This document shows positions 373-45,694 of a stretch of DNA of 64,000 bases, in pieces. How positions within the stretch are numbered: position 1 is the stretch's first letter; the number at the start of each line of letters is the position of its first letter. The notes under the pieces were generated by a model. It made no database searches and was not told the DNA's origin. It was given only the letters and a program-made list of their open reading frames with translations. This DNA is from Lytechinus pictus (Eukaryota). Both the position numbers and the translations under genes were made by a program. The stretch covers positions 37,448,001-37,512,000 of the forward strand of contig NC_087252.1 of NCBI RefSeq assembly GCF_037042905.1, in the 5' to 3' direction.

Positions 373-780
373 GGGTACATTGCCAATTCGTCTACTCACC
401 ACATGGTCTACTTTCATTTAGTCTAATGCCATTCCGTCCATCAACATTTCGTCTAACAACCATTTAGTCCATTTACCATTTGGTCCAATCATCACTTCGT
501 CTAATCACCATTTCGTCTATGACCACTTTGTCTCATAACCAGTTGGTCTAATATCCATTTAATTTCCATTCATTTTGCACAATTTAACACTTAGTCCAGT
601 TAGACCAATGGTATATATGGACTAAATGGCTATTGGACTAAATGGTTATTAGACGAAATGGTGAGTAGACCAATTGGCAATTAGACCATGTCGATAGTGG
701 ACAAACTGATGGTAGACCGAATGATAGTGGAAGAGTTGGCAATTGGACGAATTGGCATCAGGCGAATTGGAAATAAACCC
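373..780. mobile_element. Palindromic MITE built of ~15-bp subrepeats
   Basis: Imperfect TIRs gggtacattgccaattcg / cgaattggaaataaaccc. The left half repeats CCATTT(C/A)GTCTAA-like units and the right half their reverse complement. It splits the MULE-like frame. Confidence 0.75.
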
Positions 781-2677: not shown

Positions 2678-3404
2678 AGGGTTACTAAATTAGAAAAATT
2701 AGTATTCATTATTCATTAGAATTGGTCTTCATCAGACAGAAAAACCAAGATACAAATTACGATTTCTTTTAACTATAATATAATCATTTCAAAAGTTCGT
2801 TGTTTTTTCTGAATTCCACCTTAATAAACCCCGCCCCTAAAAAGTCACTTCAAAGCGAGATCATGAACACGTCATCTGTGACATATGAGAAGTAAGGAGA
2901 AAGTTGCTCAGAATTACAGCAAAGTTGGAGCAGCAGCGCGTTCCGCATCGTACGGCCACGCCTAGCCCATTGCCCCGCCCGCTCCCGGCTCTGGGCGTGT
3001 TTCGCTCCGCATCACCACACTTCAAATGCTCGCTGCCTTTTGTGATCGTTCCCTCGTGCGCTTGACTCACTACAATTGATTTTGGAATCCGAAATAATAA
3101 TAATGCCGAATCGGTGTATAGTTGCTGGTTGCGGCAACACTCCCAAGGATGAGGTGAGCTTACATCGTTTTCCACTGGATGAGAATCTACGGAAATTGTG
3201 GATTTCAAAGTAAGATTCACGCAGGCAGACTGGCATGGCCCTAGTGATTGGAGCACCATCTGCAGCGACCGCTTTTCCGAAGAGGATTTTGAGGATGCTG
3301 GTTTATATTCATTTGGAATGAAAGTCAGGAGCAAGCTCAAAGACTCGGCGGTTCCAACAATCAGGCTTGGAGTAAAGCCTTCTAAGAAGGAAGATGTGCC
3401 AACT
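2678..3404 (+). pseudogene. 5' end of a Kolobok-like DNA transposon with frameshifted THAP-domain exon (ATG 3103)
   Basis: TTAA followed by AGGG terminus at 2674-2681. Translation: MPNRCIVAGCGNTPKDEVSLHRFPLDENLRKLWI (frameshift ~3200) KVRFTQADWHGPSDWSTICSDRF...LKDSAVPTI. This is a C2CH THAP with AVPT box and His replaced by Arg. Donor-like gtgagc at 3405. The second terminus was not found. Confidence 0.7.
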
Positions 3405-3552
3405 GTGAGCTATCACAATATAAATAAGCCCCTTTTTATCAAAGTGATTAGGAAGGAACCAGAAAGCATTCAATATTTCTTGCAAATAATGGATAAAATA
3501 AACGCAATAATTCTTATTTTCAAGAATATAGAACGTCTTTCGACCTTTTATT

Positions 3553-3915
3553 TGGAAGGGGGTAGGATTGCACGTGTGATTTGCCATTTGCTGTGTGTGG
3601 TGCGGGGGAGTGGTGGTGCCGTGTGCGAGCGAGTGTGCTCATAACTGCAAATCTTGATCTTGATCTATCGTTGCAATTTGCAAGACGGAAAACTACGAAA
3701 GGTAATTTATATTGGACTTTTGACGTTAAAATAGGAGTGTTTGTCATATATTTGTGATTTGCGAACATGTGGTTCGAGATTGGAAAATTCCGTTCCGGGT
3801 TTCCCATAGTGCCTTTGCACTATGCAAATTTTGACAATAAAGCTATTTGCTTTTTGATCAATTTTTTTAACTCAACTGTATCTATTTTTTTGATTTAATC
3901 CATATACATTGTACC
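3553..3915 (+). repeat. Candidate polypurine tract plus LTR-like segment upstream of gag
   Basis: GGAAGGGGGTAGGA is followed by TG(cacg) at ~3569. AATAAA at ~3836. A Staf/ZNF143-like TTCCCATAGTGCCTTTGC lies at ~3801. No second LTR copy was seen. Confidence 0.3.
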
Positions 3916-4472
3916 TTGAACTTATTTTTCCCTTTCCAATATTTGGGAATAAGAATTAGTGTTCTGTTCTCTCGTCAATTATTTTTCCCACGATGGAAAG
4001 AATGAAAGTGAACGTATATACAGAGGAGGAGTTATGTACTGTCCCTGGGGTGGGTGGCGTTTGTCTGTAGGGCATCTTATGGATATTCCCGCATTGAAGA
4101 ATCTGGACCTACATCAGGTATTTGATTTTACATCTGCGGAACGTTTGGCTAGGCTCCAAATTCAGTCCCCTATTCCATTTACCGCAGATTATTTTTCTCC
4201 TGTTACCCGTTTGGTACCTGAGTGTATGAGCCCTGAAATGCCTTTGGGTGGGGGATATTCTTAGGTAGACAATCTATGGGAAGTACTAGGCAGTATCCCA
4301 CATCCCAGGTTCGAAGTGATGCAAACCGATCTAGGGTGTACAGTGTAGGACCTAATGCTAGGAATGCCCAAACTGGGAATGCCTAAGCTGGGACTCAGGG
4401 AGGGACTAGCCGGATAGGAAATGTTGGTAGGGCAAGTGGGAGTAACTCTCATAGACCCAGTTATACCACACC

Positions 4473-5547
4473 TTGGAACACGGTGGAAGGGGGGAGACAT
4501 CATCTTCTATTGTCCCCAAGAGTATCAGTTATGATTGGAAGGGGAGTTGGATGGCATTCATTCAAAAATTCAACAAATTTGCGGATAATGCACAGTGGAC
4601 CACTGCTCAACGTCAAAATAACCTTTGTTGGTGTCTACAAGGCCGTGCTAGTGAGGCTTTTGCTGCAATAACGCAGCGCGATCCTGGGATAGATTATTTT
4701 GATCTCTTGGGAAAGTTAGATTAGAGGTTTGGTGCGCGGGAGCTCTCCGAAACTGAACAAATTGTATTTCAGTATGCACAACAAAAGTCGGATGAAGATA
4801 TTTTTGAATGGGCGGACCGTATATCCCATCTGGCCATAAGGGGTTTTCCGGAATTGCCCGATAATTTTATTGAGCAACAATGTATAATGCGCTTTTGCCA
4901 AGGGTGTAAAGATAATGATGCCGGGCAGTGGGCGTTTAACATGAAGCCAAGTTCTCTAGAAGAGGCGGTAGGAATCGTCCCAGTTAGTACATGGGAAAAC
5001 CAGTGAACAGAAACCTGCTGGTTGGCAGACCTTCGAAGAAAAGGTTTGGGGGGAGGTGTCCATTTCGAAAGTGGGTAGGGAGGAATCCAAATCCTATACT
5101 CCGACTCGTAAGTGGCCTTCGTCATCTGCGCAGGTGTCTCGAACACAATCAACTCAAGTGTCGAGAACACAATCAACCCCTAAATATCAGTCCCAGGGGA
5201 GCAAAACCAAGGAAGAACTCCAAGAAAACCGTCTGGGTTCGCTTGAACATAAAATAGACAGAATGGAGGGACACATGTCAGAGATGCGGACATCAATAAA
5301 CAAATTGACCCAGGTCGTAAGCGCCTTGTCCGCACTTGTGGAAACATCCGCTACTAAATCACCAGCCCGTACCCCCCTTAGATCTGATAAATGCTTCAGG
5401 TGCAACCAAAGTGGGCATTTTCAATCTGACTGTCCATTAAAGTCCCCTAAGAGTGTTTCCTTTGCGTCCTGTGACCCAAACTTAGAGGGGTTGGAAGCTT
5501 TGGCCGAACTCCAGCCCGACCAGAGGGAGGCCGGGAGTCCACAGTAG
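4473..5547 (+). pseudogene. Ty3/Gypsy-like gag (capsid-like domain + CCHC zinc knuckle), disrupted
   Basis: SYDWKGSWMAFIQKFNKFA...LCWCLQGRASE, in-frame stop at 4722-4724, continuing RFGARE...EWADRISHLAIRGFP...RFCQG. Then a coiled-coil and CFRCNQSGHFQSDC (CX2CX4HX4C). Confidence 0.85.
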
Positions 5548-5708
5548 ATTCAAAATCTAGCGTAGGTGGACCACAATCACCCCATGTACCAAATTCTCCC
5601 GAACCTGATTGTTCGTCACTTGGCATCAAGGGCATAGATCCATCGAATAAAACCGAGGACCCCAGACCCAATTCTGCCCGAGGACTAGCCTCAACTGTAG
5701 GGGGTAAT

Positions 5709-6210
5709 TTGGAATGTAAAGTAGAGGAATTGGAGTATGGAGGTGACAATCCAGAACCTATTGATAACACTGCTAATAATTCTAATGATATTTTGGAACC
5801 TGATACTTTGGAACCTGAACACCTGACAGAAGACTTGGGTAGAGATGAAATGGTGATTTGTCAACTCAGTTCAACCTCCACTTTTTCTATTCCCATTCAA
5901 GTCCATGGGAAATCTATCTATGCTATTGTTGACACTGCGGCAGAAGTTACTATTGTTTCTGATAGGGTAGTGGCAAAATTTCAAAATCCTCCGCCTGTTA
6001 TCAAATCTATAACATTTAATACCGCGGGTAGGGATATGGAAATGGCCGGGAAGGTGGTACATGTAGGTCCAGTGGAAATCCGTATAGGGCCCCACACCTT
6101 CAATGATATGATTTTTGTTGCCCCTATTATTGATGATATGTTATTGGGTATGGACCTTAAGGGTAAGTATGGGTTTCTGATCGATATCCCTGCCGCAGAG
6201 TTAGTTCTGA
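5709..6210 (+). pseudogene. Retropepsin-type aspartic protease of the Gypsy-like element
   Basis: AIVDTAAEVTIVS active-site motif and downstream MLLGMD motif. Similarity ends near 6205. Confidence 0.85.
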
Positions 6211-6395
6211 GAGAAGTCAGATTCCAATTGCGCGATCACAATCAGCGCCAATTGCTGTTCCATCTGTGGTACATAGTTCTGAGAGAAGTCAGATCCCAAT
6301 TGCGCAATCACAATCAGCGCCAATTGCGGTTTCCTCTGAGGTTCATGGACATCGAACCACAATCGCGCAATCAAATCCTGCGCCAATTGCAATGA
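6204..6395 (+). repeat. Three degenerate 60-72-bp tandem units at the protease/TatD junction
   Basis: gttctgagagaagtcagat(t/c)ccaattgcgc(g/a)atcacaatcagcgccaattgc at ~6204 and ~6276, with a third diverged unit. Encodes SERSQIPIAQSQSAPIA in the TatD frame. Confidence 0.75.
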
Positions 6396-7293
6396 CCATT
6401 CCTGCTAGTGCGGGTGTGGCGACCTCTATCCCACCAGCAATGCCTGCGCCAATTGCTACGACTTGTCCTGATGAGCCAGGTTTATCTGTTCTTACAGCTT
6501 TTGACGCACATTATCACCCTGACCGTTTGAGTGCGCATCTCGGGCATGTTACGCAAAAACAGCTAGTACCGCCCCGTGTTCCGGTCAGAGTTATAGGAGG
6601 CGTCATGAATTTTTGTGACCCAGGGACTTACAGTCAAATGCCGTGTTTAGTTGGGCATCCATAGCATCTTGCTATTGGAATTCATCCTTCACGCGCAGGT
6701 ACATACACTGCGGACGATTTCACATACCTCGAGCAGACTTTGTCATCTCGTCGGGTCTCAGGTATTTAATAGCGAAGTGGGTTTGGATTACAATCTTGAT
6801 TCAAATACATGGGATTCCAAGATGCGTCTTCTAAATCGCATTTTAGAACTGGGCACTTTGGGTTATGTTCTCATCATGCACATCCGGGGACCGAATAGAA
6901 ATCCGGACCTTACTCGTTTGGTATACCGCAAGGTATTCAAGCAGGTAAGGTTGTACTGTTCCGCTTATCAGCGGATACACTTTTCGGGCGATCTAGAGAC
7001 TCTGAACGAATGGGTCTCTAATTTCCCAAAATGCTATGTAAGTTTCTCTGGGCTGCTGCGTGTATTCACGTCGGATCAGCTTAGCGCACTGCCCGTCAGA
7101 ACGACTGCTGATCGAGACAGACTCACCATATCTGCCCCTCGGGACTGATGTGGGAGTGAATACACCCAACTATATTGGGGATATAGCGGCTGCAGTCGCT
7201 GAGATAAGAAATGTTCCTCTCGAGGAAATTCTGCAGAGGACCAGCAGAAATGGTAGGATGTTGTACCTAGGCGTACATGAAAACAACGCCTAG
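6266..7293 (+). pseudogene. TatD-family (amidohydrolase-fold) DNase-like ORF, intronless, frameshifted
   Basis: Ordered motifs across three ORFs: FDAHYHPD, LGIH, SEVGLDY, IMHIRG, IHFSGD, YVSFSG, ERLLIETDSPYL...NTPNYIGDIAAAVAEIRNVPLEEILQRTSRNGRMLY. Frameshifts near 6650 and 7095. Confidence 0.85.
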
Positions 7294-7901
7294 ATACATG
7301 GAAGTAATTTTGTATATACCTTTTTGTCTTTGGTTTGTTTTCCTTTTACAAGAGGGATCAGAGCTTGATCTAAATACATTTAAATTTGCAATAGGAAGTG
7401 CAGAAAGTTGACGGGTAAACTATTGTAACAAATACAGAAAAGACAAAATTATATCAACTAACTCCCTGTTTGTACTTGTTTTTAAAATATACATGAGTAC
7501 GAAGATGAGTTGCGATGTCAACATGTCAACTTCATAGCAACCGTATCTTTATCCCTTGGTTTCTTGAATAATTTGTCATACCGGAAGATTTGATGGGGTT
7601 CTTTTGGGAGGAACTTTCTTTTGATGTGGTGTTTAATTTTGATTCAAATTTATCAACAAAGCAGGAGTATATTTTTCTGCAAAATTGCTTTCACATTCTA
7701 TGTGTGTGTGTTGCATTGTCTGATGCTTTGTAGAAGTACATGTATTGTCAACGCAGCTGGATGATTTATTCCTGAAATGCGATAGTTGGACAGCTGTCAT
7801 ACATATCAGTCAGACTATATAAATAGCTACCATAATTACCTAATATGTTATGTATTTTTCCCCTTTTTTTTCCAAGACAATTTTCAGCAGCAGGTTCTGC
7901 A

Positions 7902-10900
7902 GAAAATGCAGAAACTTGAAGAGGTGCAGGCCCAGATAGTTGATAGGCTGGCAAACTTGGCCAAATCATCACCAACTTCTTGGGTAGGTCCCGCCGACCT
8001 GCAGGAGCCCTTATCGGAACCTATAAAGTCAATTCAGGAATTCGACATGCTCGAAACGAAACTTGCCGAGTCAGATTTTGAGAAGAGAATGGTAAGTTTG
8101 AAAAAATTTGCATACTAATTTGGCATTATTTAATGATCCATTAAAATGATTGTTTTTCCTTTTTATACAGAGCTCTTTGATTATCTAAACCTTGAATATC
8201 CTGAGTTTCTGATTTATGCCTTGATTGCTTTATAGCCATGTTTTAAAAAAAACAGTGAAATGCTGTAAATTTTGCAAATGATAACTGCATCAGGGTGACA
8301 CGTACAGAGAATCTGCAGCATTGTAACTGATAATGGTACTTTAATTTCAGATCAACTACCTGAGTCTAGTCGGCGGGGTCAATATTGCCCAAACAAGTCG
8401 GCGTATCATGAAAAAGCTGGGGTCAAATAATCTTTGGTCGGATTTCAACGTGTTTGGTCGGAAGGGAAAGCGCGGTCTGAAGTCGACCAGATTTTATCCA
8501 GTCATTGTCAGTAAGTGATCAGTTATTATGATAAGCCAATTTCCATTTCACTTTTATACGTTTCTGAATTCACCTGATGAGTTAAAATGATTGGTGATCA
8601 ATTGGAAAATGATGGCCTCTAGCAACCTAACTGCATTACACATTTATTCAACCTGTATGTTATTGTTATCAAAAACTAGAATTTAAGGACGTTCCACAGT
8701 TAAAGTGAAATCCATGTCATATTCTACAAACTTTGCACATAGATACTTTAGAACCTTAATATTCGAAATATGCAAAGATTAACATAGGTCCATGTGCTTG
8801 ATTTTTTGCTATAGAGCTTCAAAGTTCACCGAAATTGATGTTCTTAAGAATTGCGCATTCAAAAGAATTTAGCATTTTTAGACCGCCCAAGATTACTACA
8901 ATGAGTTTAAACCTGTATTACTCAGTCAAAATACATGAAAAAGTCATCAAATTTCGCAAGAGAGTTAATAATTGTATCGTTAGAATGTAGAAACTATTAA
9001 TAGTGCTATTTGTTTGCAATTTGAAGTTTAACAGCACTGTCATTCTTAAAAAAGGCGTAAACGATAACAAAATCCCAATCTAAAAAAATGTAACATTTCA
9101 GTAACAAACTACAAACGTACAATAAATGCTGCACTTTATTCAAAATCCATGTCATTTTCACCAAAATTTGCAGAGTTGTAGAGGAAGGTATACCTAAGAG
9201 GTACAAACATTAAAAAATAAGGGTTCATGTGCTTGTTTTAAAACTATTAGCATTTTTATTAGAGCAAATGTGCTTTTTAAAACACCAAAAATGCGCCGAA
9301 TGCTTTGTATCTATGTGAAGAAAAAATCAAAACCACTCTACCATTTATTCAAACTCGGGGTAATATTCGTGATTCTTGGTAGCACTGCAGAGTAAAGTAT
9401 TTCAAAATTGTAGAGAATTTTTTTTTTAATGGTCCATGGAATAATTCCATTTTTTAGCTTCATGAAATAACGCATCGGATCTGCAGTTAAAGTGCAGAAG
9501 ATGAAAAAAATCAGCTCATACCCGCAGCTAATTAATCACCTGTTCATCCATTGTGACGTCAGCGCGCAGTGTGTAAACTATGCGCAGATCATAATGCGCA
9601 CAAACATAACTGTGGAACGTCCTTAAGCATATTCTTTTGATAAAATATCCCCTTCTTTTAGTCTCTTTGAAAAGTACGATACACAACTATGTATTATAGA
9701 CAGCAGTGCTAAACACCATGTACTATGTCAATTTGATCCTCTATCACCATCATTCAGTCGCCATGTTGTTAATATATGTCTTGTGCTTCTTGTAGAATTC
9801 CTCAAACTGAGAAGAACAACAATTTTGAAAAATAGTTTATGCTACTAACTCAGTGTTGAATAATGTATGAAATATGAGACATGTCAATACCTTTGATATG
9901 TATACATGCACACGCACAAAAAATGCAGAAACTTGAAGAGGTGCAGGCCCAGATAGTTGATAGGCTGGCAAACTTGGCCAAATCATCACCAACTTCTTGG
10001 GTAGGTCCTGCCGACCTGCAGGAGCCCTTATCGGAACCTATAAAGTCAATTCAGGAATTCGACATGCTCGAAACGAAACTTGCCGAGTCAGATTTTAAGA
10101 AGAGAATGGTAAGTTTGAAAATATCTGCATACTAATTTGGCATTATTTAATCATCCATTAAAATGATTGTTTTTCCTTTTTATACAGAGCACTTTGATTA
10201 TCTAAACCTTGAATATCCTGAGTGTCTGATTTATGCCTTGATTGCTTTATAGCCATGTTTAAAAAAAAAGAGTGAAATGCTGTAAATTTTGCAAATGATA
10301 ACTGCATCAGGGTGACACGTACGGTGAGGTTTTAGCAAGAGAATCATTCATAGTACTGTATAGAAATGAGATGGTTTAATCCTAGTTGTGTGAGAATATG
10401 CAGCATTGTAACTGATAATGGTACTTTAATTTCAGATCAACTACCTGAGTCTAGTCGGCGGGGTCAATATGGCCCAAACAAGACGGCGTATCATGAAAAA
10501 GCGGGGGTCAAATAATCTTTGGTCGGAAGGGAAAGCGCGGTCTGAATTCGACCAGATTTCATCCAGTCATTGTCAGTAAGTGATCAGTTATTATGATAAG
10601 CCAATTTCAATTTCACTTTTATACGTTTCTGAATTCACCTGATGAGTTAAAATGATTGGTGATCAATTGGAAAATGATGGCCTCTAGCAAAATAAGTGCA
10701 TTACACATTTATTCAACCTGTATGTTATTGTTATCAAAAACTAGAATTTAAGCATATTCTTTTGATAAAATATCCCCTTCTTTTAGTCTCTTTGAAAAGT
10801 ACGATACACAACTATGTATTATAGACAGCAGTGCTAAACACCATGTACTATGTCAATTTGATCCTCTATCACCATCATTCAGTCGCCATGTTGTTAATAT

Positions 10901-13347
10901 ATGTCTTGTGCTTCTTGTAGAATTCTTCAAACTGAAAAGAACAACAATTTTGAAAAATAGTTTATGCTACTAACTCAGTGTTGAATAATGTATGAAATAT
11001 GAGACATGTCAATACCTTTGATATGATTACATGCACACGCACAAAAAATGCAGAAACTTGAAGAGGTGCAGGCCCAGATAGTTGATAGGCTGGCAAACTT
11101 GGCCAAATCATCACCAACTTCTTGGGTAGGTCCTGCTGACCTGCAGGAGCCCTTATCGGAACCTATAAAGTCAATTCAGGAATTCGACATGCTCGAAACG
11201 AAACTTGCCGAGTCAGATTTTAAGAAGAGAATGGTAAGTTTGAAAATATTTGCATACTAATTTGGCATTATTTAATCATCCCTTAAAATGATTGTTTTTT
11301 CTTTTTATACAGAGCTCTTTGATTATCGAAACCTTGAATATCCCGAGTTTCTGATTTATGCCTTGATTGCTTTATAGCCATGTTTTTAAAAAAAGAGTGA
11401 AATGCTGTAAATTTTGCAAATGATAACTGCATCAGGGTGACACGTACAGTGAGGTTTTAGCAAGAGAATCATTCATAGTACTGTATGGAAATGAGATGGT
11501 TTAATCCTAGTTGTGTGAGAATCTGCAGCATTGTAACTGATAATGGTACTTTAATTTCAGATCAACTACCTGAGTCTAGTCGGCATGGTCAATATTGCCC
11601 AAACAAGTCGGCGTATTATGAAAAAGCGGGGGTCAAATAATCTTTGGTCGGATTTCAACTTGTTTGGTCGGAAGGGAAAGCGCGGTCTGAAGTCGACCAG
11701 ATTTTATCCAGTCATTGTCAGTAAGTGATCAGTTATTATGATAAGCCAATTTCAATTTCACTTTTATACGTTTCTGAATTCACCTGATGAGTTAAAATGA
11801 TTGGTGATCAATTGGAAAATGATGCCTCTAGCAAAATAAGTGCATTACACATTTATTCAACCTGTATGTTATTGTTATCAAAAACTAGAATTTAAGCATA
11901 TTCTTTTGATAAAATATCCCCTTATTTTAGTCTCTTTGAAAAGTACCATACACAACTATGTATTACAGACAGCAGTGCTAAACACCATGTACTATGTCAA
12001 TTTGATCCTCTATCACCATCATTCAGTCGCCATGTTGTTAATATATGTCTTGTGCTTCTTGTAGATTTCCTCAAACTGAAAAAAAAAAACAATTTTGAAA
12101 AATAGTTTATGCTACTAACTCAGTGTTGAATAATGTATGAAATATGAGACATGTCAATACCTTTGATATGTATACATGCACATGCACAAAAAATGCAGAA
12201 ACTTGAAGAGGTGCAGGCCCAGATAGTTGATAGGCTGGCAAACTTGGCCAAATCATCACCAACTTCTTGGCTAGGTCCTGCCGACCTGCAGGAGCCCTTA
12301 TCGGAACCTATAAAGTCAATTCAGGAATTCAACATGCTCGAAACGAAACTTGCCGAGTCAGATTTTAAGAAGAGAACATAAGTTTGAAAATATTTGCATA
12401 CTAATATGGCATTATTTCATCATCCCTTAAAATGATTGTTTTTCCTTTTTATACAGAGCTCTTTGATTATCGAAACCTTGAATATCCTGAGTTTCTGATT
12501 TATGCCTTGATTGCTTTATAGCCATGTTTAAAAAAAAAAGTGAAATGCTGTAAATTTTACAAATGATAACTGCATCAGGGTGACACGTACAGTGAGGTTT
12601 TAGCAAGAGAATCATTCATAGTACTGTATGGAAATGAGATGGTTTAATCCTAGTTGTGTGAGAATCTGCAGCATTGTAATTGATAATGGTACTTTCATTT
12701 CAGATCAACTACCCGAGTCTAATCGGCGGGGTCAATATTGCCCAAACAAGTCGGCGTATCATGAAAAAGCGGGGGTCAAATAATCTTTGGTCGGATTTCA
12801 ACTTGTTTGGTCGGAAGGGAAACCGCGGTCTGAAGTCGACCAGATTTTATCCAGTCATTGTCAGTAAGTGATCAGTTATTATGATAAGCCAATTTCAATT
12901 TCACTTTTATACGTTTCTGAATTCACCTGATGAGTTAAAATGATTGGTGATCAATTGGAAAATGATGGCCTCTAGCAAAATAAGTGCATTACACATTTAT
13001 TCAACCTGTATGTTATTGTTATCAAAAACTAGAATTTAAGCATATTCTTTTGATAAAATATCCCCTTCTTTTTATAGTGTCTTTGAAAAGTACCATACAC
13101 AACTATGTATTATAGACAGCAGTGCTAAACACCATGTACTATGTCAATTTGATCCTCTATCACCATCATTCAGTCGCCATGTTGTTAATATATGTCTTGT
13201 GCTTCTTGTAGAATTCCTCAAACTGAAAAGAACACAAATTTTGAAAAAATAGTTTATGCTACTAACTCAGTGTTGAATAATGTATGAAATATGAGACATG
13301 TCAATACCTATATACTTTGATAGTATACATGCATACGCACAAAAAAT
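7902..13347 (+). repeat. Four tandem ~1.1-1.15-kb units containing two DUF4806-like exons
   Basis: MQKLEEVQAQ... begins at ~7906, 9923, 11048 and 12193. Intron sequences are near-identical. Confidence 0.95.
8687..9622. mobile_element. Kolobok-type non-autonomous element with TTAA TSD
   Basis: TIR GGACGTTCCACAGTT / AACTGTGGAACGTCC with TTAA on both sides. The other three tandem units show the empty site ctagaatTTAAgcatatt. Confidence 0.92.
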
Positions 13348-13778
13348 TGATTTCAGCGCAATGTGCGGATGAAAGTTGGGGACGACGGATTGTACATCAT
13401 AAAACAAGCGGTCCCTGGGTAGCTACTACTGGTCTTTAATTGCATCAATTGTTGATTTCCAAGTTAATGGTTTATTTATCCAAATGGTCATTGAAGCATG
13501 TCAACTACTGTTCACAAAAACTTGGCCTTTGAAGTCGCATACATATGCAGCATTGTTTTCTTCTTGTAAGGTAGCTGTTGAATTTGGCCTCTAAGGACTA
13601 CTTATGTTCATGCCAATCTGAACAATGAATTACTTATGTGTATCCATGTATTTATTCAGAGAAAATGCCCATTTTTGCGAAACAAAAAAGGGGTGGGCCA
13701 TAACATCGTAACCGACATACCGTTTTTCCCCTAGTACATTTGAAAAGAGTGCAATGGAATGACCCATTTGTCATTTAA

Positions 13779-14856: not shown

Positions 14857-16238
14857 ATGCCAAAAGCAAAGTCTAAACAGCGGTCTCCAGGACAGGGGAG
14901 GGGAAGTGGCAGTCGCGGAGCGAAGACAGGGCAGAAAAGAACATCGCTTCAGGATCGTCAACGAAAGGACAGAGAAAGGCGTCTGCCACAGTGCCATCGC
15001 TATCTATGTCAGCACCTCCAGCTGAGACGGATATTCCGGCGGAAAGACCGATTCCCACCTTGGTCGGGTCGAGATCGAGTTTTCAGCTTCCGGATGAAGG
15101 CAAAACACAGGGCCAACCAGGTGAGTCTTGGCCTTTACTAACCCCCCAATCTGTGGATGCCCCTCCCTCAATGCCCAAATTTTCACAGCCAGGCCTTCCT
15201 GCCATGCGCCATAGCATAAGCGAGCAGTTGGGCTCGAATGTACCTTTAGCTATGCAGGAATGTATCTGGAAAGGGGAGTTTGTGGAGCTGGGGGATCTGC
15301 TAAAAGCAGGATCCCCTACATGTAACGATATGACCCTCACATTAGATCAGGCTAGCGGGGGATTTCAACTGCGCCCCCATCCTCGGCTGATAGCCATCCG
15401 CTCTATCGAGCAATGGACGAGTGCGATGCTCATTTATCTTTCGATATATGCAGAGCGTCAAAACGAAAGATGTCGGGAGCTACTTAAATATACGAGTGTG
15501 GTAAGGACGGCAGCGGCCTCCAACTATAACTGGCGCGACTATGATGTTCAGTTTCGGCTACGCCACACGACTCAGCCGGAATTATCATGTGTAGTCGTGG
15601 ATACAGAATTGTGGTTGCTAGCAGCAACGGCACAGCCCTTTCGAGCATACGGGGGAGGCCCATATGCTACCCAGGGCTTTCCCAGCGGAGGTCGGCAGCG
15701 ACAACTCTCATTTCGAGGGAAGAGGAACTCCAGCCAAAGCCGGGGGGCTGGCCAGTCCACTAACAAGCACGGGCCACGGCTCGGCTTGTGTTTTGCATTT
15801 ACTGCTAGCCGGTGCAACAGAGGAAAAAGCTGTCAGTACCGGCACAGCTGCAACCACTGCGGTGACCATTCCCATGGAGAGATCGCATGCCCATCTGTGG
15901 AGCAGCTTTATACTGAACGACAAGTCCTGTTGAGTTCTTCACGAGCCCAGAAAATATGCGCACATACGACATGGCCTGGTCTGCTTTCCAGACATTTAGG
16001 GGTGATTACCGTTTTGACACATTGCAAAGGCCTAATATTGAGCAAGTTGCGTTATTCGTTGCATATGTCTTGGCACAAATATTCTGCTAACACAATTGCC
16101 GCATACGTATCAGGACTCTCATTTTATCTGCGCAGTAACAACATGGAAGATATTACCCAATCATTTCCAATTAAACGATTAATTGATGGTTGTAGACGTC
16201 GTCATGTTCGAAAAGACCCTACTACTATTCAACAATGA
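14857..16238 (+). mobile_element. Internally deleted DIRS/Ngaro-like retrotransposon: gag fused to tyrosine-recombinase N-terminal domain
   Basis: IWKGEFVELGDLL, IRSIEQWTSAMLIY, WRDYDVQFR and the Cys/His finger CFAFTASRCNRGKSCQYRHSCNHCGDHSHGEIAC. Then YSANTIAAYVSGLSFYL...DITQSFPIKRLIDGCRR (integrase SAM-like). No RT/RNaseH and no catalytic YR residues. Confidence 0.8.
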
Positions 16239-16398: not shown

Positions 16399-16793
16399 TT
16401 TTCTAATGTATTTTATTTCTTTATGTATTTCTGTGTTTTTTCAACTTTATGTTTTTTGTTTTTTTTTATGGAAATCATTGGCAACACTATTTTCATTTCT
16501 GTCATAAATAACATGAAATCCATTGCTTTCAATCATTGAAATTAAAGGAAACCATAAGTCTTGAATTTATATCATATTATATTTTTAGGGGTTAAAATTT
16601 GCTCTAAGTTGATATATCAATCGCCAAATTTGACCCACGGGGTGATTCACATTGAACTTGCAAAGAATCTCAAAATCATGCATTATTCACGTCGTCTGCT
16701 GTCATGGGGGCAGCCATGTTTTCTTTCTCGAGCTCGCTTGCAACGTATTTGTGGACAACTCAATCGCGCGTGCTGTCAGTTCTCTACGTGAAG

Positions 16794-17144
16794 ATGGTGC
16801 TGTGCCAAGCTTTCGGGCGTTCGAATCGGAGCGGAATATGTCGGGAAAAAAGTTTTCACCCGATTCCCGATCCAAACAGCGATGCAGGATTGTGCAAAAA
16901 ATGGTTAGCTGCCATTCGTGTGGAGAAATTCAATCCGAATTCGTACCAGTATGACAGAAATAATGTGATCTGTAATGATCACTTCACGGCAAGCGACTTC
17001 ATGGAGGACATTCGTGCACGGCTGATGAAAACGAAACCAAGGAAAATGTTGAAAGAAGGTGCTGTTCCTTCCATATTCGCTCATCGGGCTCCTCCGAAAG
17101 TGAGAAGGTCAACAGAGATGCTGTCTCAAAGATCTGCAAAACAG
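16794..17144 (+). pseudogene. THAP-domain first exon of a DNA transposon
   Basis: MVLCQAFGRSNR...SFHPIP...KKWLAAIR...VICNDHF...LKEGAVPSIF. The second Cys is replaced by Arg. Donor gttagt at 17145. No downstream transposase is visible. Confidence 0.8.
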
Positions 17145-17898
17145 GTTAGTATAGTTTGATGCTAAAATTATAAATAACCAGTTTGAAAAAAAAATTAATG
17201 TTTGTATTATCTTTGCGTGGGTGCGCCCTTGCTTACGAATGGGGCCGGGGCCCATACACAGAGCTCTAGCTCTATCCGCCCTGCTAGCGCTCCCTGCATT
17301 CTGAACGAAAACACGGCTGTCAGCAGCTCCATGCAACTTATAAGGCGCTGATCTGGCTGCGTGATGCTGGACGTCCAGACAACAGGCCGGAAGCTCTAAT
17401 TTTTTGCGCTAGAGTCAGCTGCTGATTGAGGTTGAGTGATGATGTCGCAGGTGATATAGAAATAGAATAGATCTAAAATGAAGATGCATGTATCCTATTA
17501 TCATATTATACGTGAGATTATACACTCCAACAATAAATAAATCTAGAATTCTAGATCTTAAAGTTATAATTTGGAGATTTGGAAATTTTATTCAGATTTT
17601 CAATCTGGGCTTGAGGTAATACAGGCCATTTGTTTTCACCAACTGGGGAATAAACAGAAGGGAGAGCTAGACACCCTCATCCAGAGAATGGATTTCTGGG
17701 GGATCCGGAAATTTGCAGAGGCACATCCAGGTATTAACTCTATGTAACAAATACGTTGTGGAATTGGATGTTTTTACTGTACTGAAATCTTCATGTACTG
17801 GTATCACTTTCTTGCTTTTCAATTCTCACTCACGAACTTTTGAGTTCAACTGTATAAAATCATTCTAATATGTATTATGTGATTTGTATGGATTCGTC

Positions 17899-20800
17899 AA
17901 AATTGATCTGTCAAATATTTTTGATATGTTTTAAACAATGTGTGAATAAAATGAGTTGAATAATGTGTAAATTCATATTCTTTAATGTTTGTACAATGGT
18001 TGCTTTACATGACATTATATAAAAAAGAATGTCAAGCGGAAGAAAATAAATGATGAATTGAATCATCGACCTCTTCACATCACCTGTATGCTATACAAGC
18101 TTTATGTTCTCTACCAAACCGGACTGAACTGAGACTAAATGGCCTTGGATATGGTCACAAGAAGTTCTATTCTACATTGAAAACAAAAGCATCAACCATA
18201 CATCTGATTCTACTCGATACTCGCACCACAGTCCGACAAAACCAGACTAGACAGAGACTTAATAGAGAAGAATACCAGTAGAAGTTCTATTCTCATCTGA
18301 ATGAAATGGCATCAACCTTTAAAGGTACATCAGACTCTACTTACTACCCTCACCATGGTAAAAGTATGGAATGGCCAAGAAGAGTGCATTTCATTTTAAA
18401 CTGGAAAATATGTGGAGAACTAAAGAAATACACGGTAGACATCCATAGCTTGCCATAACGTGCGCCCAAACAAGATGCGTGCGTCCCCACGATTGCGTAT
18501 GTTCATCTATGGGTTGCGGGTATCTCATTGAAAACAGTCTTTGACATACATGTACCTTCCAAGTACAGAAACAGGTACATGTATAGTACTTGTAGTATTT
18601 TAACAAGTGGTAAACCATAAACCTTCATGTTTCTGGACAATCATGCATGAACACAAAAAGAGAGAATAGGACAGCAAGGAGTCCAAAACAGTGTAACAGT
18701 GACAGACTTACATTATATGCTCTGAAGAATTCCCTAAGGAAAGAATTACTCTACGTAAGGAATACTGGCAACTGAGTGATTATAATCATCAAAGAGATCT
18801 CTTACAGGGGCAAATATGAAAATCTGTGTCTAGCGTGAAAGAGGGCAAGAAGTCTGTTTGAGGAAGAAAAACAAAACTATCACATTCCAGGAGAATGATG
18901 TTTGAATATGAGTGTTCAAAAGTTTATTTCTCAAGAATTGTACCAGTCAAGGCAGGTGCAGGAACCCGTCGACTTGGTAGATGATGTGGAAGCAATGTTA
19001 GTCAAGGTGGTGACAGGGACACCCTTAGATTTCTCTGGTGGAAGGACGGTCACACAAGCCGTGAGCCATCAGAGTAAAGGAAGACGGTGCATCTCTTCAG
19101 TGTTACCTCATCACCAAGTATTGCTGGCCACAACCTGACGGAAAGTGGATCTAATGGATCAAATAAAGAGGAGAGAGTATACTAAATTCATAACAATGGT
19201 AATGATACCTGTTAAAAAAATTAAGTTTAAAGTGACAACCAAAGAATAAGTACAAAGAGGTATAAAGATATGCATTAAGCAGGGCCAGGACCATTGAGCT
19301 AGGAAGAGGTTCTAACGGTGCAGTTTACCTCTTCAGGCATGCGGTGACAAAAGATACCATCGCTCTGAAAAAATTGATCTGTCAAATATTTTTGATATGT
19401 TTTAAACAATGTGTGAATAAAATGAGTTGAATAATGTGTAAATTCATATTCTTTAATGTTTGTACAATGGTTGCTTTACATGACTTTATATAAAAAAGAA
19501 TGTCAAGCGGAAGAAAATAAATGATGAATTGAATCATCGACCTCTTCACATCACCTGTATGCTATACAAGCTTTATGTTCTCTACCAAACCGGACTGAAC
19601 TGAGACTAAATGGCCTTGGATATGGTCACAAGAAGTTCTATTCTACATTGAAAACAAAAGCATCATCCATACATCGGACTCTACTCGATACTCGCAACAC
19701 AGTGGCAAAACCAGACTAGACAGAGACTTAATCGAGAAGGATACCAGTAGAAGTTCTATTCCCATCTGAATGAAATGGCATCAACCTTTAAAGGTACATC
19801 AAGACTCTAATAACTACCCACACCATGGTAAAAGTATGGAATGGCCAAGAGGAGTGCATTTCATTTTAAACTGGAAAATATGTGGAGAACTAAAATACAC
19901 GGTAGACATCCATAGCTTGCCATAACGTGCGCCATCACGAGATGCATGAGTCCGCATGACTGCGTATGTTTATCTATGGGTTGCGGTTATTTCATTAAAA
20001 ACAGACGTTGACATACATGTATCTTGCAAAGAACACAAACAGGTAGAGTACCTGTAGTATTTTAACAAGTGGTAAACCATAGACCTTCATGTTTCTGGAC
20101 AATCATGCATGGACACAAAAAGAGAGCATAGGACAGCAAGGAGTCCAAAACAGTGTAACTGTGACAGACTTAGATTCATATGCTCTGAAGAATTCCCCGA
20201 GGAAAGAATGACTCTACGTAATGAATACTGGGAACGGAGTGATTATAATCATCAAAGAGATCTCTTACAGGGGCAAATATGAAAATCTGTGTCTAGCGTG
20301 AAAGAGGGCAAGAAGACTGTTTGAGGAAGAAAAACAAAACTATCACATTCCAGGAGAATGATGTTTGAATATGAGTGTGCAAAAGTTTATTTCTCAAGAA
20401 TTGTACAAGTCAAGGCAGGTGCAGGAACCCGTCGACTTGGTAGATGATGTGGAAGCAATGTTAGTCAAGGTGGTGACAGGGACACCCTTAGATTTCTCTG
20501 GTGGAAGGACGGTCACACAAGCCGTGAGCCATCAGAGTAAAGGAAGACGGTGCATCTCTTCAGTGCTACCTCATCACCAGGTATTGCTGGCCACAACCTG
20601 ATGGAAAGTGGATCTGATGGATCAAGTAAAGAGGAGAGAGTATACTAAATTCATAACAATGGTAATGATACCCGTTAAAAAAATTTAAGTTTAAAGTGAC
20701 AACCAAAGAATAAGTACAAAGAGGTATAAAGATATGCATTAAGCAGGGCCAGGACCATTGAGCTAGGAAGAGGTTCTAACGGTGTAGTTTACCTCTTCAG

Positions 20801-23800
20801 GCATGCGGTGACAAAAGATACCATCGCTCTGAAAAAATTGATCAGTCAAATATTTTTGATATGTTTTAAACAATGTGTGAATAAAATGAGTTGAATAATG
20901 TGTAAATTCATATTCTTTAATGTTTGTACAATGGTTGCTTTACATGACTTTATATAAAAAAGAATGTCAATCGGAAGAAAATAAATGATGAATTGAATCA
21001 TCGACCTCTTCACATCACCTGTATGCTATACAAGCTTTATGTTCTCTACCAAACCGGACTGAACTGAGACTAAATGGCCTTGGATATGGTCACAAGAAGT
21101 TCTATTCTACATTGAAAACAAAAGCATCAACCATACATCGGATTCTACTCGATACTCGCAACACAGTCCGACAAAACCTGACTAGACAGAGACTTAATGG
21201 AGAAGGATACCAGTAGAAGTTCTATTCTCATCTGAATGAAATGGCATCAACCTTTAAAGGTACATCAGACTCTAATTACTACCCACACCATGGTAAAAGT
21301 ATGGAATGGCCAAGAAGAGTGCATTTCATTTTAAACTGGAAAATATGTGGAGAACTAATGAAATACACGGTAGACATCCATAGCTTGCCATAACGTGCGC
21401 CCAAACAAGATGCGTGCGTCCCCACGATTGCGTATGTTCATCTATGGGTTGCGGGTATCTCATTGAAAACAGTCTTTGACATACATGTACGTTCCAAGTA
21501 TAGAAACAGGTACATGTATAGTACTTGTAGTATTTTAACAAGTGGTAAACCTAATGTTTGTACAATGGTTGCTTTACATGACTTTATATAAAAAAGAATG
21601 TCAATCGGAAGAAAATAAATGATGAATTGAATCATCGACCTCTTCACATCACCTGTATGCTATACAAGCTTTATGTTCTCTACCAAACAGGACTGAACTG
21701 AGACTAATTGGCCTTGGATATGGTCACAAGAAGTTCTATTCTACATTGAAAACAAAAGCATCATCCATACATCGGAGAAATCGGACTCTACTCGATACTC
21801 GCACCACAGTCCGACAAAACCAGACTAGACAGAGACTTAATGGAGAAGGATACCAGTAGAAGTTCTATTCTCATCTGAATGAAATGGCATCAACCTTTAA
21901 AGGTACATCAGACTCTAATTACTACCCACACCATGGTAAAAGTATGGAATGGCCAAGAAGAGTGCATTTCATTTTAAACTGGAAAATATGTGGAGAACTA
22001 AAGAAATACACGGTAGACATCCATAGCTTGCCATAACGTGCGCCCAAACAAGATGCGTGCGTCCCCACGATTGCGTATGTTCATCTATGGGTTGCGGGTA
22101 TCTCATTGAAAACAGTCTTTGACATACATGTACCTTCCAAGTACAGAAACAGGTACATGTATAGTACTTGTAGTATTTTAACAAGTGGTAAACCATAAAC
22201 CTTCATGTTTCTGTACAATCATGCTTGGACACAAAAAGAGAGCATAGGACAGCAAGGAGTCCAAAACAGTGTAACTGTGACAGATCTAGATTCAGATGCT
22301 CGGAAAAATTCCCTGAGGAAAGAATGACTCTACGTAAGGAATACTGGCAACTGAGTGATTATAATCATCAAAGAGATCTCTTACAGGGGCAAATATGAAA
22401 ATCTGTGTCTAGCGTGAAAGAGGGCAAGAAGACTGTTTGAGGAAGAAAAACAAAACTATCACATTCCAGGAGAATGATGTTTGAATATGAGTGTGCAAAA
22501 GTTTATTTCTCAAGAATTGTACAAGTCAAGGCAGGTGCAGGAACCCGTCGACTTGGTAGATGATGTGAAAGCAATGTTAGTCAAGGTGGTGACAGGGACA
22601 CCCTTAAATTTCTCTGGTGGAAAGACGGTCACACAAGCCGTGAGCCATCAGAGTAAAGGAAGACGGTGCATCTCTTCAGTGTTACCTCATCACCAAGTAT
22701 TGCTGGCCACAACCTGACGGAAAGTGGATCTAATGGATCAAGTAAAGAGGAGAGAGTATACTAAATTCATAACAATGGTAATGATACCTGTTAAAAAAAA
22801 TTTAAGTTTAAAGTGACAACCAAAGAATAAGTACAAAGAGGTATAAAGATATGCATTTAGCAGGGCCAGGACCATTGAGCTAGGAAGAGGTTCTAACGGT
22901 GCAGTTTACCTCTTCAGGCATGCGGTGACAAAAGATACCATCGCTCTGAAAAAATTGATCTGTCAAATATTTTTGATATGTTTTAAACAATGTGTGAATA
23001 AAATGAGTTGAATAATGTGTAAATTCATATTCTTTAATGTTTGTACAATGGTTGCTTTACATGACTTTATATAAAAAAGAATGTCAAGCGGAAGAAAATA
23101 AATGATGAATTGAATCATCGACCTCTTCACATCACCTGTATGCTATACAAGCTTTATGTTCTCTACCAAACCGGACTGAACTGAGACTAAATGGCCTTGG
23201 ATATGGTCACAAGAAGTTCTATTCTACATTGAAAACAAAAGCATCATCCATACATCGGACTCTACTCGATACTCGCAACACAGTGGCAAAACCAGACTAG
23301 ACAGAGACTTAATCGAGAAGGATACCAGTAGAAGTTCTATTCCCATCTGAATGAAATGGCATCAACCTTTAAAGGTACATCAAGACTCTAATAACTACCC
23401 ACACCATGGTAAAAGTATGGAATGGCCAAGAGGAGTGCATTTCATTTTAAACTGGAAAATATGTGGAGAACTAAAATACACGGTAGACATCCATAGCTTG
23501 CCATAACGTGCGCCATCACGAGATGCATGAGTCTGCATGACTGCGTATGTTTATCTATGGGTTGCGGTTATTTCATTAAAAACAGACGTTGACATACATG
23601 TATCTTGCAAAGAACACAAACAGGTAGAGTACCTGTAGTATTTTAACAAGTGGTAAACCATAGACCTTCATGTTTCTGGACAATCATGCATGGACACAAA
23701 AAGAGAGCATAGGACAGCAAGGAGTCCAAAACAGTGTAACTGTGACAGACTTAGATTCATATGCTCTGAAGAATTCCCCGAGGAAAGAATGACTCTACGT

Positions 23801-45410: not shown

Positions 45411-45694
45411 CTGATATGGAAGAATAGGAAAATTTAGAAAACAAAAGAGATAGTTTTATACAAGACTACAATATTAGCTTCTATTCCCACATTATAGGGG
45501 TGGCCATTTACAGGTAATCAGTAAAGATTCTGTAAAATTATGATTACTGCAATTACCATGAGAACTGACGGAGCAAACTAATGCTTCATATCTTATCAAA
45601 CCATAATCCTTTCTGTTTGCATGCATTTTCATGAGTATGACAGCCTCAGGTTTGAAGTTATTTTCTTCAAGTGCCTTTATTTGGATAGGACTTC

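What the first reader, a model, noticed from the sequence alone, without database searches (positions are those of the whole stretch)
3553..7293. Gypsy-like gag-protease cassette carrying a TatD nuclease where pol enzymes should be
Seen: on one strand, with no introns, the order is gag, CCHC knuckle, retropepsin (DTAA), a short repeat linker and a full-length set of TatD motifs (DxHxH, GIH, EVGLDY, HxR, ETDSPYL). No YxDD RT, RNaseH or DDE integrase is present. Established: TatD is a cellular metal-dependent exonuclease/AP-endonuclease and is not a canonical Ty3/Gypsy domain. Inference: a Gypsy lineage captured TatD as an accessory ORF, perhaps for cDNA/R-loop processing or competition with other elements. 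This copy is either a deletion derivative or a non-autonomous capsid+nuclease element. This is the best candidate for an undescribed system in the window.
Basis: partly seen in the sequence, partly recalled or inferred. Interest (0 to 1): 0.85.

Follow-up and report, generated by a model that had tools for sequence, protein, structure and literature searches.

The report
Broken retrotransposon copy carrying TatD nuclease
This stretch is a dead, internally deleted copy of a sea-urchin Gypsy-type retrotransposon whose intact relatives carry, after gag and pol, a conserved third gene for a zinc-finger-plus-TatD nuclease, an accessory gene I could not find described in the literature.

Summary
On the + strand lie gag (about 3985-5547, CCHC knuckle), a retropepsin (5709-6200, DTAA), an APIA-repeat linker (6203-6469) and a TatD domain (6470-7293). 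No RT, RNase H or integrase occurs anywhere in the window. The copy is decayed: stops, frameshifts, no LTRs.

The TatD part is 85-90% identical to intronless Lytechinus ORFs. Their homologues sit directly behind a full PR-RT-RH-IN-PHD pol and a gag-CCHC ORF in Diadema setosum (complete element with LTRs and TSD) and in unassigned ENA and JGI contigs. The window's gag and protease are homologous to those elements' gag and pol.

Intact elements are therefore gag-pol-ORF3. ORF3 is a C2H2-finger/helical domain of unknown fold, a variable linker and a YcfH/TATDN2-like TatD. The window copy has lost about 4 kb, from the protease end into the ORF3 linker.

ORF3 is under purifying selection (dN/dS 0.07-0.09 in both domains), keeps its catalytic residues, and also occurs in molluscs.

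What ORF3 does is inferred, not shown; most likely it processes RNA:DNA intermediates. I found no paper describing it.

The parts
3553..3984 (+). Possible 5' untranslated leader. TGGAAGGGGGTAGGATT at 3553 loosely resembles the tRNA-complementary primer-binding site of relative L002.
   Evidence: Sequence read compared with L002. The resemblance is weak and not statistically supported. No LTR is detectable upstream.
3985..5547 (+). gag pseudogene: helix-hairpin-helix-like N-terminus (about 3985-4140), capsid-like core (4488-5003) and coiled coil plus CCHC knuckle (5056-5547).
   Evidence: tblastn of L004 gag residues 186-341 and 396-467 hits 4512-4979 and 5224-5436 (E 4e-40). zf-CCHC E 2.4e-6. 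In-frame stop at 4722-4724 and frameshifts in the N-terminus and near 5006-5056.
5709..6200 (+). Retropepsin domain of pol (active site VDTAAE). This is the only part of pol that is left.
   Evidence: PF13975 E 1.5e-9. 40% identity to L004 pol residues 74-235. The frame is -1 relative to gag, as in L004 and L005.
6196..6206 (+). Deletion junction. Protease homology ends here and ORF3-linker homology begins. RT, RNase H, integrase, PHD and the first ~220-260 residues of ORF3 (counted on P0001) are missing, about 4 kb in all.
   Evidence: tblastn of P0001 starts at residue 262, weakly from 219, at window 6203/6167. blastn to L001 and L002 starts at 6203-6236. Pol homology ends at 6209.
6203..6469 (+). 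Variable ORF3 linker with APIA-type repeats. It includes a 72-bp unit repeated twice at 6202-6346.
   Evidence: Homologous to the SAPIAMTIPAGAGVATS repeats of P0001.
6470..7293 (+). TatD (PF01026) domain of ORF3, as a pseudogene: stop at 6662-6664, frameshifts near 6768 and 7085, and a 3-residue gap in the QRIHLHSFSG segment.
   Evidence: Pfam E 2.6e-12 for the C-terminal piece. 90% identity of residues encoded by 6771-7091 to P0001. Translations.
7294..7505 (+). 3' untranslated region of the element. It is cut about 470 bp before the point where the 3' LTR starts in relative L002.
   Evidence: 85% identity to L002 12005-12215, after which homology stops. The L002 LTR has no match in the window.

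Best explanation
Window 3985-7505 is a decayed, LTR-less, internally deleted copy of a Ty3/Gypsy-type LTR retrotransposon family found in sea urchins.

Intact members have this layout: LTR, tRNA-type primer site, gag (HhH N-terminus, capsid, CCHC), pol in the -1 frame (PR-RT-RNase H-IN-PHD), a separate ORF3, polypurine tract, LTR. ORF3 encodes three parts:

- a C2H2-type zinc finger fused to a helical domain of unknown fold;
- a variable repeat linker;
- a TatD metal-dependent nuclease of the YcfH/TATDN2 branch.

In the window copy about 4 kb is missing, from just after the protease to inside the ORF3 linker. That deletion put TatD next to gag-protease. The copy then accumulated stops and frameshifts and is non-functional. 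All of this is shown.

The following is inferred. In live elements ORF3 is an active nuclease made by the element itself, in the position where errantiviruses carry env. By analogy with human TATDN2, which degrades the RNA strand of R-loops, it most likely trims or removes RNA or 3' ends in RNA:DNA replication or integration intermediates. The zinc-finger domain probably tethers it to nucleic acid or chromatin.
For: **Family membership**
- The window's TatD piece is 90% identical to P0001, an intronless ORF of L. variegatus. Only 131 cluster representatives out of 1.84 billion match it.
- Nucleotide identity is 85.6% to L001 and 88.5% to L002 over 6378-7505.

**ORF3 belongs to the element**
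- Diadema setosum L005 has 222-bp LTRs (96% identical, TG..CA ends, TSD GGGG). Its ORFs are intact: gag 3919-5754, pol 5865-9914 (PR, RT, RH, IN, PHD) and ORF3 9947-12544.
- The same gene order occurs in L004, L007 and the ENA contigs of P0133 and P0134.
- L. pictus L002 reads LTR, tRNA-like primer site, IN-PHD, ORF3, LTR. Its LTRs are 99.8% identical and the TSD is CTGC.
- The window's gag and protease are homologous to the gag and pol of these elements.

**ORF3 is functional in live copies**
- dN/dS between L001 and L002 is 0.16 overall, 0.07 in the N-domain, 0.09 in TatD and 0.49 in the linker.
- The metal-binding residues H397, H399, E484, H519, H554 and D605 (P0001 numbering) are at least 95% conserved in 99 sequences.
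- The N-domain has an invariant C-x4-C-x11-H-x4-H motif and gives an AlphaFold model at pLDDT 93.
- The closest solved structures by sequence are YcfH-type TatDs.
- The biochemistry of human TATDN2 is taken from PMC10711561.
Against: - No full-length element of the window's own subfamily was recovered. The nearest relatives (L001, L002) are themselves partial.
- The window copy has no LTR, TSD or convincing primer site, so its mode and time of insertion cannot be read.
- All related loci were found through their TatD, so the retention of ORF3 in them is by ascertainment.
- The source organisms of the ENA (ERZ26222911) and JGI (3300025895) contigs are unknown.
- No experiment or expression data bear on what ORF3 does.
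- The analogy to TATDN2 rests on about 30% identity to canonical TATDN2-like proteins.
Confidence: 0.85

Rival explanations
1. Non-autonomous 'capsid plus nuclease' element. On this view the gag-protease-ORF3 layout without RT/RH/IN is a selected, trans-mobilised derivative that has been copied as such, not a one-off deletion in a dead copy.
For: - Three RT-less gag-PR-ORF3 copies were found in three subfamilies or species: the window, L. pictus L003 (gag 872-2360, PR 2701-3126, ORF3 in the same frame from about 3190) and Elysia crispata L008.
- L008 has 98.9% identical LTRs and a GACT TSD.
- A different derivative, L002 (LTR-IN-ORF3-LTR), has 99.8% identical LTRs. This is compatible with mobilisation after the deletion.
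Against: - The three junctions lie at different positions in both pol and ORF3, so they are independent events.
- Other Elysia paralogues (P0161, P0163, P0171) carry the normal ORF3 N-terminus, not the L008 junction.
- No second copy with the window's junction was seen.
- The window copy has no LTRs.
- In the window the protease and ORF3 are in different frames.
Confidence: 0.12
2. Chance juxtaposition: an unrelated gag-protease fragment happens to lie next to a 5'-truncated copy of a cellular TatD-family gene.
For: - The closest intact relative, P0001 (L001), has no pol next to it. NCBI annotates it as an ordinary uncharacterised gene.
- The window junction is abrupt and the two parts are in different frames.
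Against: - The window's gag and protease are homologous to the gag and pol of exactly those elements that carry ORF3 (E 4e-40 and 1e-28).
- The order gag, PR, ORF3 on one strand recurs in L003 and L008.
- ORF3 directly follows pol in at least six contexts.
Confidence: 0.02
3. Processed pseudogene of the host TATDN2 gene, inserted into or beside a retrotransposon fragment.
For: The TatD part is intronless and 5'-truncated, as LINE-mediated retrocopies often are. Lytechinus has genes labelled 'putative deoxyribonuclease TATDN2'.
Against: - The window piece is 36% identical to that gene (P0019), against 90% to the ORF3 family. P0001 and P0138 share 35% over the TatD domain and nothing outside it.
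- The repeat linker and 212 bp of 3' UTR are shared with element copies L001 and L002.
- There is no poly(A) where homology ends at 7505.
Confidence: 0.01

Closest known systems
Ty3/Gypsy (Metaviridae) LTR retrotransposons with a third ORF in the env position (errantiviruses such as gypsy and ZAM; own knowledge)
   Same: Intact relatives share LTRs with TG..CA ends, a 4-bp TSD, a tRNA-type primer site, gag with a CCHC knuckle, and pol in PR-RT-RH-IN order. They also have a separate ORF3 between pol and the 3' LTR.
   Different: ORF3 is not an envelope glycoprotein. Pfam finds only TatD_DNase in it. It is a zinc-finger/helical domain plus a nuclease. The window copy itself lacks RT, RH, IN and LTRs.
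Retrotransposons that have taken up host domains: chromodomain chromoviruses, PHD-finger elements and CopiaMBD (PMC6673714)
   Same: A host-type module sits in a retroelement and is kept under selection. This lineage also has the known PHD finger at the integrase C-terminus.
   Different: Those modules are chromatin readers fused to integrase or pol. Here the acquisition is an enzyme (a nuclease) in its own ORF with its own DNA-binding-like domain.
Human TATDN2 and bacterial YcfH-type TatD nucleases
   Same: Same Pfam family (PF01026; intact ORF3 E about 1e-34). The same metal-binding His, Glu and Asp residues are conserved. YcfH-type chains are the best PDB sequence matches. Canonical TATDN2-like animal proteins are the nearest outgroup.
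   Different: ORF3 TatDs form their own strongly supported clade (SH-aLRT 100). They carry an N-terminal domain absent from TATDN2-labelled proteins, are intronless and multi-copy, and sit inside LTR elements. Their substrate is untested.
Internally deleted, non-autonomous LTR elements such as LARDs or gag-only BARE-2 in plants (own knowledge)
   Same: Loss of the RT-IN region with retention of gag and terminal parts. Relatives L002 and L008 keep near-identical LTRs and TSDs.
   Different: No evidence that the window's deletion form was ever copied. The window copy has no LTRs and is riddled with stops and frameshifts.

Membership tests
Ty3/Gypsy LTR retrotransposon | gag with CCHC zinc knuckle | tested here: met
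   PF00098 E 2.4e-6 in 5056-5547. The gag core is homologous to L004 gag (E 4e-40).
Ty3/Gypsy LTR retrotransposon | Retropepsin with a D-T/S-G/A active site, downstream of gag | tested here: met
   PF13975 E 1.5e-9, VDTAAE at about 5930-5947. The -1 frame relative to gag matches L004 and L005.
Ty3/Gypsy LTR retrotransposon | RT, RNase H and integrase in the order PR-RT-RH-IN | tested here: not met
   Absent from the whole window: pol tblastn hits only 5742-6209. Met in relatives L005 and L007, L004 and the ENA contigs. The window copy is therefore a remnant of such an element, not a complete member.
Ty3/Gypsy LTR retrotransposon | Flanking LTRs with target-site duplication | tested here: not met
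   No direct repeats flank the region, and the LTRs of L002, L005 and L008 have no match in the window. Met in relatives: L005 (222 bp, 96%, TSD GGGG), L002 (about 456 bp, 99.8%, TSD CTGC) and L008 (264 bp, 98.9%, TSD GACT).
Ty3/Gypsy LTR retrotransposon | tRNA-complementary primer-binding site and polypurine tract | tested here: inconclusive
   The window has only a loose resemblance at 3553. L002 has about 30 nt with the complement of a tRNA T-arm and acceptor end right after its 5' LTR, and G-rich tracts precede the 3' LTRs of L002 and L005. No tRNA gene was available to name the primer.
TatD metal-dependent nuclease (PF01026) | Profile match over the whole domain | tested here: met
   The window pieces match individually (E 2.6e-12 and 0.036). 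Intact relatives match positions 1-252 of the 253-position profile at E about 1e-34.
TatD metal-dependent nuclease (PF01026) | Conserved metal ligands: HxH, Glu of EvGLD, two further His, Asp of ETD | tested here: met
   At least 95% conserved in 99 family members. In the window the motifs are readable, but the frame is broken and the second-His segment has a 3-residue gap.
TatD metal-dependent nuclease (PF01026) | Nuclease activity | not testable with these tools
   Needs purified protein.
Processed pseudogene of host TATDN2 | The host gene is the closest relative; poly(A) tail at the 3' end | tested here: not met
   36% identity to P0019 against 90% to ORF3-family P0001. No poly(A) at 7505.
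Errantivirus-type env ORF3 | Envelope glycoprotein domains in ORF3 | tested here: not met
   Pfam finds only TatD_DNase in 20 or more ORF3 proteins. The N-domain model has no match in PDB or BFVD.

The most novel reading that the evidence does not exclude
The ORF3-TatD Gypsy lineage may be an old clade spanning echinoderms and molluscs that exchanges genes with its hosts. Specifically, the multi-exon Lytechinus genes annotated 'putative deoxyribonuclease TATDN2' (P0019, P0138, P0145, P0146) would be domesticated copies of the element's ORF3 nuclease rather than the ancestral TATDN2.

On the outgroup-rooted tree these genes sit deep inside the ORF3 clade. The AU test does not reject the opposite topology (p 0.119).
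Probability: 0.25. Interest if true: 0.8.

Novelty: new variant of a known kind. Interest (0 to 1): 0.62.

Why it matters
LTR retrotransposons are known to pick up envelope genes, chromatin readers and dUTPases. A conserved, separately encoded TatD nuclease with its own zinc-finger domain would be a new class of accessory gene.

It would link the poorly understood TATDN2 branch, whose human member degrades the RNA strand of R-loops, to retroelement replication. That gives a natural system for asking what TatD nucleases do with RNA:DNA hybrids.

There is a practical side too. Genome pipelines label these ORFs 'uncharacterized protein', 'mucin-17-like' or 'putative TATDN2'. TATDN2 gene counts and orthology in echinoderms and molluscs are therefore probably contaminated by transposon copies.

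The window copy itself is inert.

Tried and rejected
- **Protease ORF search.** A search with the 228-aa protease ORF found one 181-aa fragment only. The length filter excludes polyproteins, so the Gypsy clade of the element could not be named.
- **Pfam on gag.** The gag core pieces gave no hit.
- **LTR search in the window.** I tried direct repeats, low-stringency blastn between the flanks, and the LTRs of L002, L005 and L008 as queries. Nothing was found.
- **Fold search of the ORF3 N-domain.** Against PDB and BFVD there were no matches below E = 1, only weak C2H2-finger similarity.
- **tRNA scan.** I scanned the window and six loci to name the primer tRNA and found none.
- **Literature.** Five searches combined TatD with retrotransposon, gag, LTR, Gypsy, Repbase or reverse transcriptase. 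None returned a paper describing TatD in a retroelement. The giant-squid genome paper lists a 'TATDN2' among transposon-like genes inside the Hox cluster, without comment.
- **Shared deletion junction in Elysia.** I considered that the Elysia deletion form had been amplified. The paralogues do not share the junction.
- **Lytechinus 'TATDN2' as the host source gene.** I first treated it that way. The tree makes this uncertain.
- **Consensus or repaired sequence.** None was built. Window pieces were always analysed separately.
Full report
**What is in the window**

All features lie on the + strand.

- **gag N-terminus:** about 3985-4140, helix-hairpin-helix-like (VNVYTEEELCTVPGVGG).
- **gag core:** 4488-5003.
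- **Coiled coil and CCHC knuckle:** 5056-5547 (PF00098, E 2.4e-6).
- **Retropepsin:** 5709-6200, with VDTAAE (PF13975, E 1.5e-9).
- **Repeat linker:** from 6203, with a 72-bp unit repeated twice at 6202-6346.
- **TatD domain:** 6470-7293, with FDAHYH, AIGIHP, SEVGLDY, MHIRG and ETDSPYL. Its C-terminal piece matches PF01026 at E 2.6e-12.

The region is not an open frame. It has an in-frame stop at 4722-4724, frameshifts in the gag N-terminus and near 5006-5056, a stop at 6662-6664, and frameshifts near 6768 and 7085. A 3-residue gap sits in the conserved QRIHLHSFSG segment.

The frame change between the knuckle ORF and the protease is -1. Intact relatives L004 and L005 have the same offset, so it is native rather than a lesion.

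No direct repeats flank the region. No other copy of any part exists in the window.

**The TatD part belongs to a distinct, multi-copy family**

I ran a full HMMER search of 1.84 billion representatives with the 107-residue piece encoded by 6771-7091. It gave only 131 hits at E of 0.001 or better. Many were 600-1100 residues long with TatD at the C-terminus.

The best hit, P0001, is 90% identical. It is 'uncharacterized protein LOC121426781' of Lytechinus variegatus, and P0132 is its L. pictus counterpart. Both are single-exon. The window is therefore from a Lytechinus-like sea urchin.

At the DNA level the window matches these loci at 85.6% and 88.5% from about 6203 to 7505. That is 212 bp past the stop, and nowhere else.

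P0001 has an N-terminal domain (CPFRGC...H...H, then PPNSPAVLIHWRPLLFL) that is absent from the window. Protein homology starts at P0001 residue 262, weakly from 219, exactly where protease homology ends. The linker therefore belongs to the TatD gene, and the window holds only the 3' two-thirds of that gene.

**The TatD gene is ORF3 of a Gypsy-type LTR retrotransposon**

Genomic contexts of relatives are as follows.

| Locus or contig | Source | Arrangement |
|---|---|---|
| Contigs of P0133 and P0134 | ENA sample ERZ26222911 | TatD ORF starts 40-45 bp after a 1410-1414-aa ORF with protease, RVT_1, RT_RNaseH, Integrase_H2C2, rve and PHD; a zf-CCHC ORF precedes it |
| L004 | JGI contig | gag 294-1754, pol to 6106, ORF3 6361-9591; shared 63-bp repeats at both contig ends |
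| L007 | JGI contig | pol, then ORF3 overlapping its end |
| L005 | Diadema setosum chromosome | Complete element (details below) |
| L002 | L. pictus, locus of P0132 | ~456-bp LTR copies 99.8% identical, TSD CTGC, ~30-nt tRNA-like primer site after the 5' LTR, then IN-PHD (7970-9904) and ORF3 |
| L001, L006 | L. variegatus | ORF3 alone |

The Diadema element L005 has 222-bp LTRs at 1336-1557 and 13416-13637. They are 96% identical, with TG..CA ends, a G-rich tract before the 3' LTR and the TSD GGGG. Its ORFs are intact: gag 3919-5754 (CCHC), pol 5865-9914 (PR 59-149, RT 387-544, RNase H 609-737, IN 928-1098, PHD 1299-1343) and ORF3 9947-12544.

The window's gag and protease are homologous to the gag and pol of these same elements. 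L004 gag residues 186-341 match at E 4e-40. Pol residues 74-235 match at 40% identity. Nothing beyond pol residue 235 matches anywhere in the 64 kb.

**What happened to the window copy**

Compared with intact elements, the window lacks pol from about residue 236 to its end. It also lacks the pol-ORF3 spacer and the first ~220-260 residues of ORF3 (P0001 numbering). That is roughly 4 kb, removed at a sharp junction near 6200.

The copy also lacks both LTRs. Homology to the L001 and L002 3' UTR stops at 7505, about 470 bp before the L002 3' LTR. The L002, L005 and L008 LTRs have no match in the window. The sequence TGGAAGGGGGTAGGATT at 3553 faintly recalls the L002 primer site, but this is not significant.

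dN/dS of the window's TatD pieces, each analysed separately, is 0.18 against L002 and 0.13 against L001. Most of the divergence therefore arose while the lineage was still coding, and the inactivating lesions came later.

**ORF3 is a functional gene in live elements**

- **Selection.** Between L001 and L002, dN/dS is 0.16 overall, 0.07 in the N-domain, 0.09 in TatD and 0.49 in the linker.
- **Catalytic residues.** Across 99 near-complete TatD domains of the family, the canonical metal ligands are at least 95% conserved. These are H397 and H399, E484, H519, H554 and D605 in P0001 numbering.
- **N-domain distribution.** An HMM of it recognises 55 of the first 140 proteins, and also mollusc proteins. 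It does not recognise the TATDN2-labelled proteins.
- **N-domain structure.** It has an invariant C-x4-C-x11-H-x4-H motif plus the NSPAxLxHWRxL motif. AlphaFold gives a confident model (pLDDT 93, pTM 0.87): a zinc-finger hairpin and helix packed on a helical bundle. Foldseek finds nothing below E = 1 in PDB or BFVD, and Pfam has no model for it.
- **Nearest solved structures.** By sequence the TatD domain is nearest to YcfH-type chains (E 5e-15). It is far from TATDN1 (E 3e-5).

**Distribution, and relation to host TATDN2**

ORF3-type proteins with the N-domain occur in these taxa:

- echinoids: Lytechinus, Strongylocentrotus and Diadema;
- molluscs: Ruditapes philippinarum, Elysia crispata (a cluster of 28 sequences), and a contig binned with a clam symbiont.

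In Elysia L008 the ORF lies inside an element with 264-bp LTRs (98.9% identical) and the TSD GACT. That element has gag and a protease fragment fused in frame to ORF3, with no RT, RH or IN.

On a TatD-domain tree rooted with canonical TATDN2-like proteins of two shrimps, a bryozoan and P0158, the ORF3 TatDs form one clade (SH-aLRT 100). The Lytechinus genes labelled 'putative TATDN2' fall inside that clade. An AU test does not reject placing them with the outgroup (p 0.119, ΔlnL 35.9).

The direction is therefore open: either the element captured a host gene, or the host domesticated the element's ORF3. Either way the window's TatD is not a retrocopy of that gene (36% against 90% identity).

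**Recurrent RT-less derivatives**

Besides the window, two other copies have gag-protease-ORF3 with no RT, RH or IN. They are L003 in L. pictus, from a subfamily about 45-50% identical in protein, and L008 in Elysia.

The junctions differ. L003 keeps the whole protease and the whole ORF3 in one frame. L008 keeps only about 35 protease residues. Other Elysia paralogues lack the L008 junction.

These look like independent deletions. All loci were found through TatD, which biases the sample. The recurrence is nevertheless noted as unexplained.

**Mechanism**

Shown: the element architecture, the selection on ORF3, and an intact catalytic set.

Inferred: ORF3 is an element-encoded, metal-dependent nuclease tethered by a zinc-finger domain. 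Human TATDN2 degrades the RNA strand of R-loops and cleaves structured RNA in a Mg-dependent way (PMC10711561). By analogy, ORF3 most likely acts on RNA:DNA intermediates of reverse transcription or integration. I put this at about 0.45.

Alternatives are damping of nucleic-acid sensing, action against competing elements, and target-site processing. The integrase-linked PHD finger is a module already known in retrotransposons (PMC6673714).

**Verdict**

The window feature itself is an inert relic. It nevertheless points to a family-level feature that five literature searches did not find described. Repbase annotations could not be checked.

I rate the novelty as a new variant of a known kind and the interest at 0.62.

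Noticed in passing
window 7786-13440: Four to five tandem units of about 1.13 kb (97-99% identical between some units). Each carries a 70-110-aa ORF beginning MQKLEEVQAQIVDRLANLAKSS. It has no Pfam match and starts about 280 bp after the element remnant ends.
   Followed up: partly
window 14991-16238 (+): A 415-aa ORF with a Cys/His-rich cluster and no significant Pfam hit. It looks like another transposon-derived protein.
   Followed up: partly
window 16704-17159 (+) and 3198-3644 (+): THAP-domain ORFs (E 1.5e-13 and a weak 4e-3). The weak one abuts the 5' side of the retrotransposon remnant.
   Followed up: partly
window 18001-34000: A 16-kb plateau of strong positive AT skew (+0.14 to +0.18) and GC skew. 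No tandem repeat scores 200 or more.
   Followed up: partly
window 34552-34965 (+); 44656-49969 (-): A protein-kinase fragment (PF00069, E 2.9e-9). On the minus strand there is a run of long ORFs, including a 498-aa multi-C2H2 zinc-finger ORF that I did not scan.
   Followed up: no
P0019, P0138 (L. variegatus); P0145, P0146 (L. pictus): Genes annotated 'putative deoxyribonuclease TATDN2' lack the ORF3 N-domain yet fall inside the retrotransposon ORF3 TatD clade. L. pictus has two copies on different chromosomes. The AU test is inconclusive (p 0.119).
   Followed up: partly
L003 1-14200 (L. pictus CM073243.1): A gag-PR-ORF3 copy without RT/RH/IN, with protease and ORF3 in one frame. A 2.5-kb segmental duplicate of its ORF3 region lies at 9841-12400 (97.5% identical), followed by further duplicated blocks.
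   Followed up: partly
P0187 (S. purpuratus, 1337 aa) and P0158 (ENA, 490 aa): P0187 is an old gene model that joins a complete gag (HhH plus capsid) to ORF3 with no protease or RT. P0158 is a canonical TatD preceded by two CCHC knuckles, from an unknown organism.
   Followed up: partly
ENA contig of P0015; P0015 residues 148-289 and 387-530: Two TatD ORFs (822 and 833 aa) lie in tandem 3.4 kb apart with no pol. P0015 itself has two copies of the N-domain.
   Followed up: no
window 441-713: Inverted repeat of 47-64 nt arms (73-87% complementary) built from 16-nt tandem units, with a 130-nt spacer.
   Followed up: no
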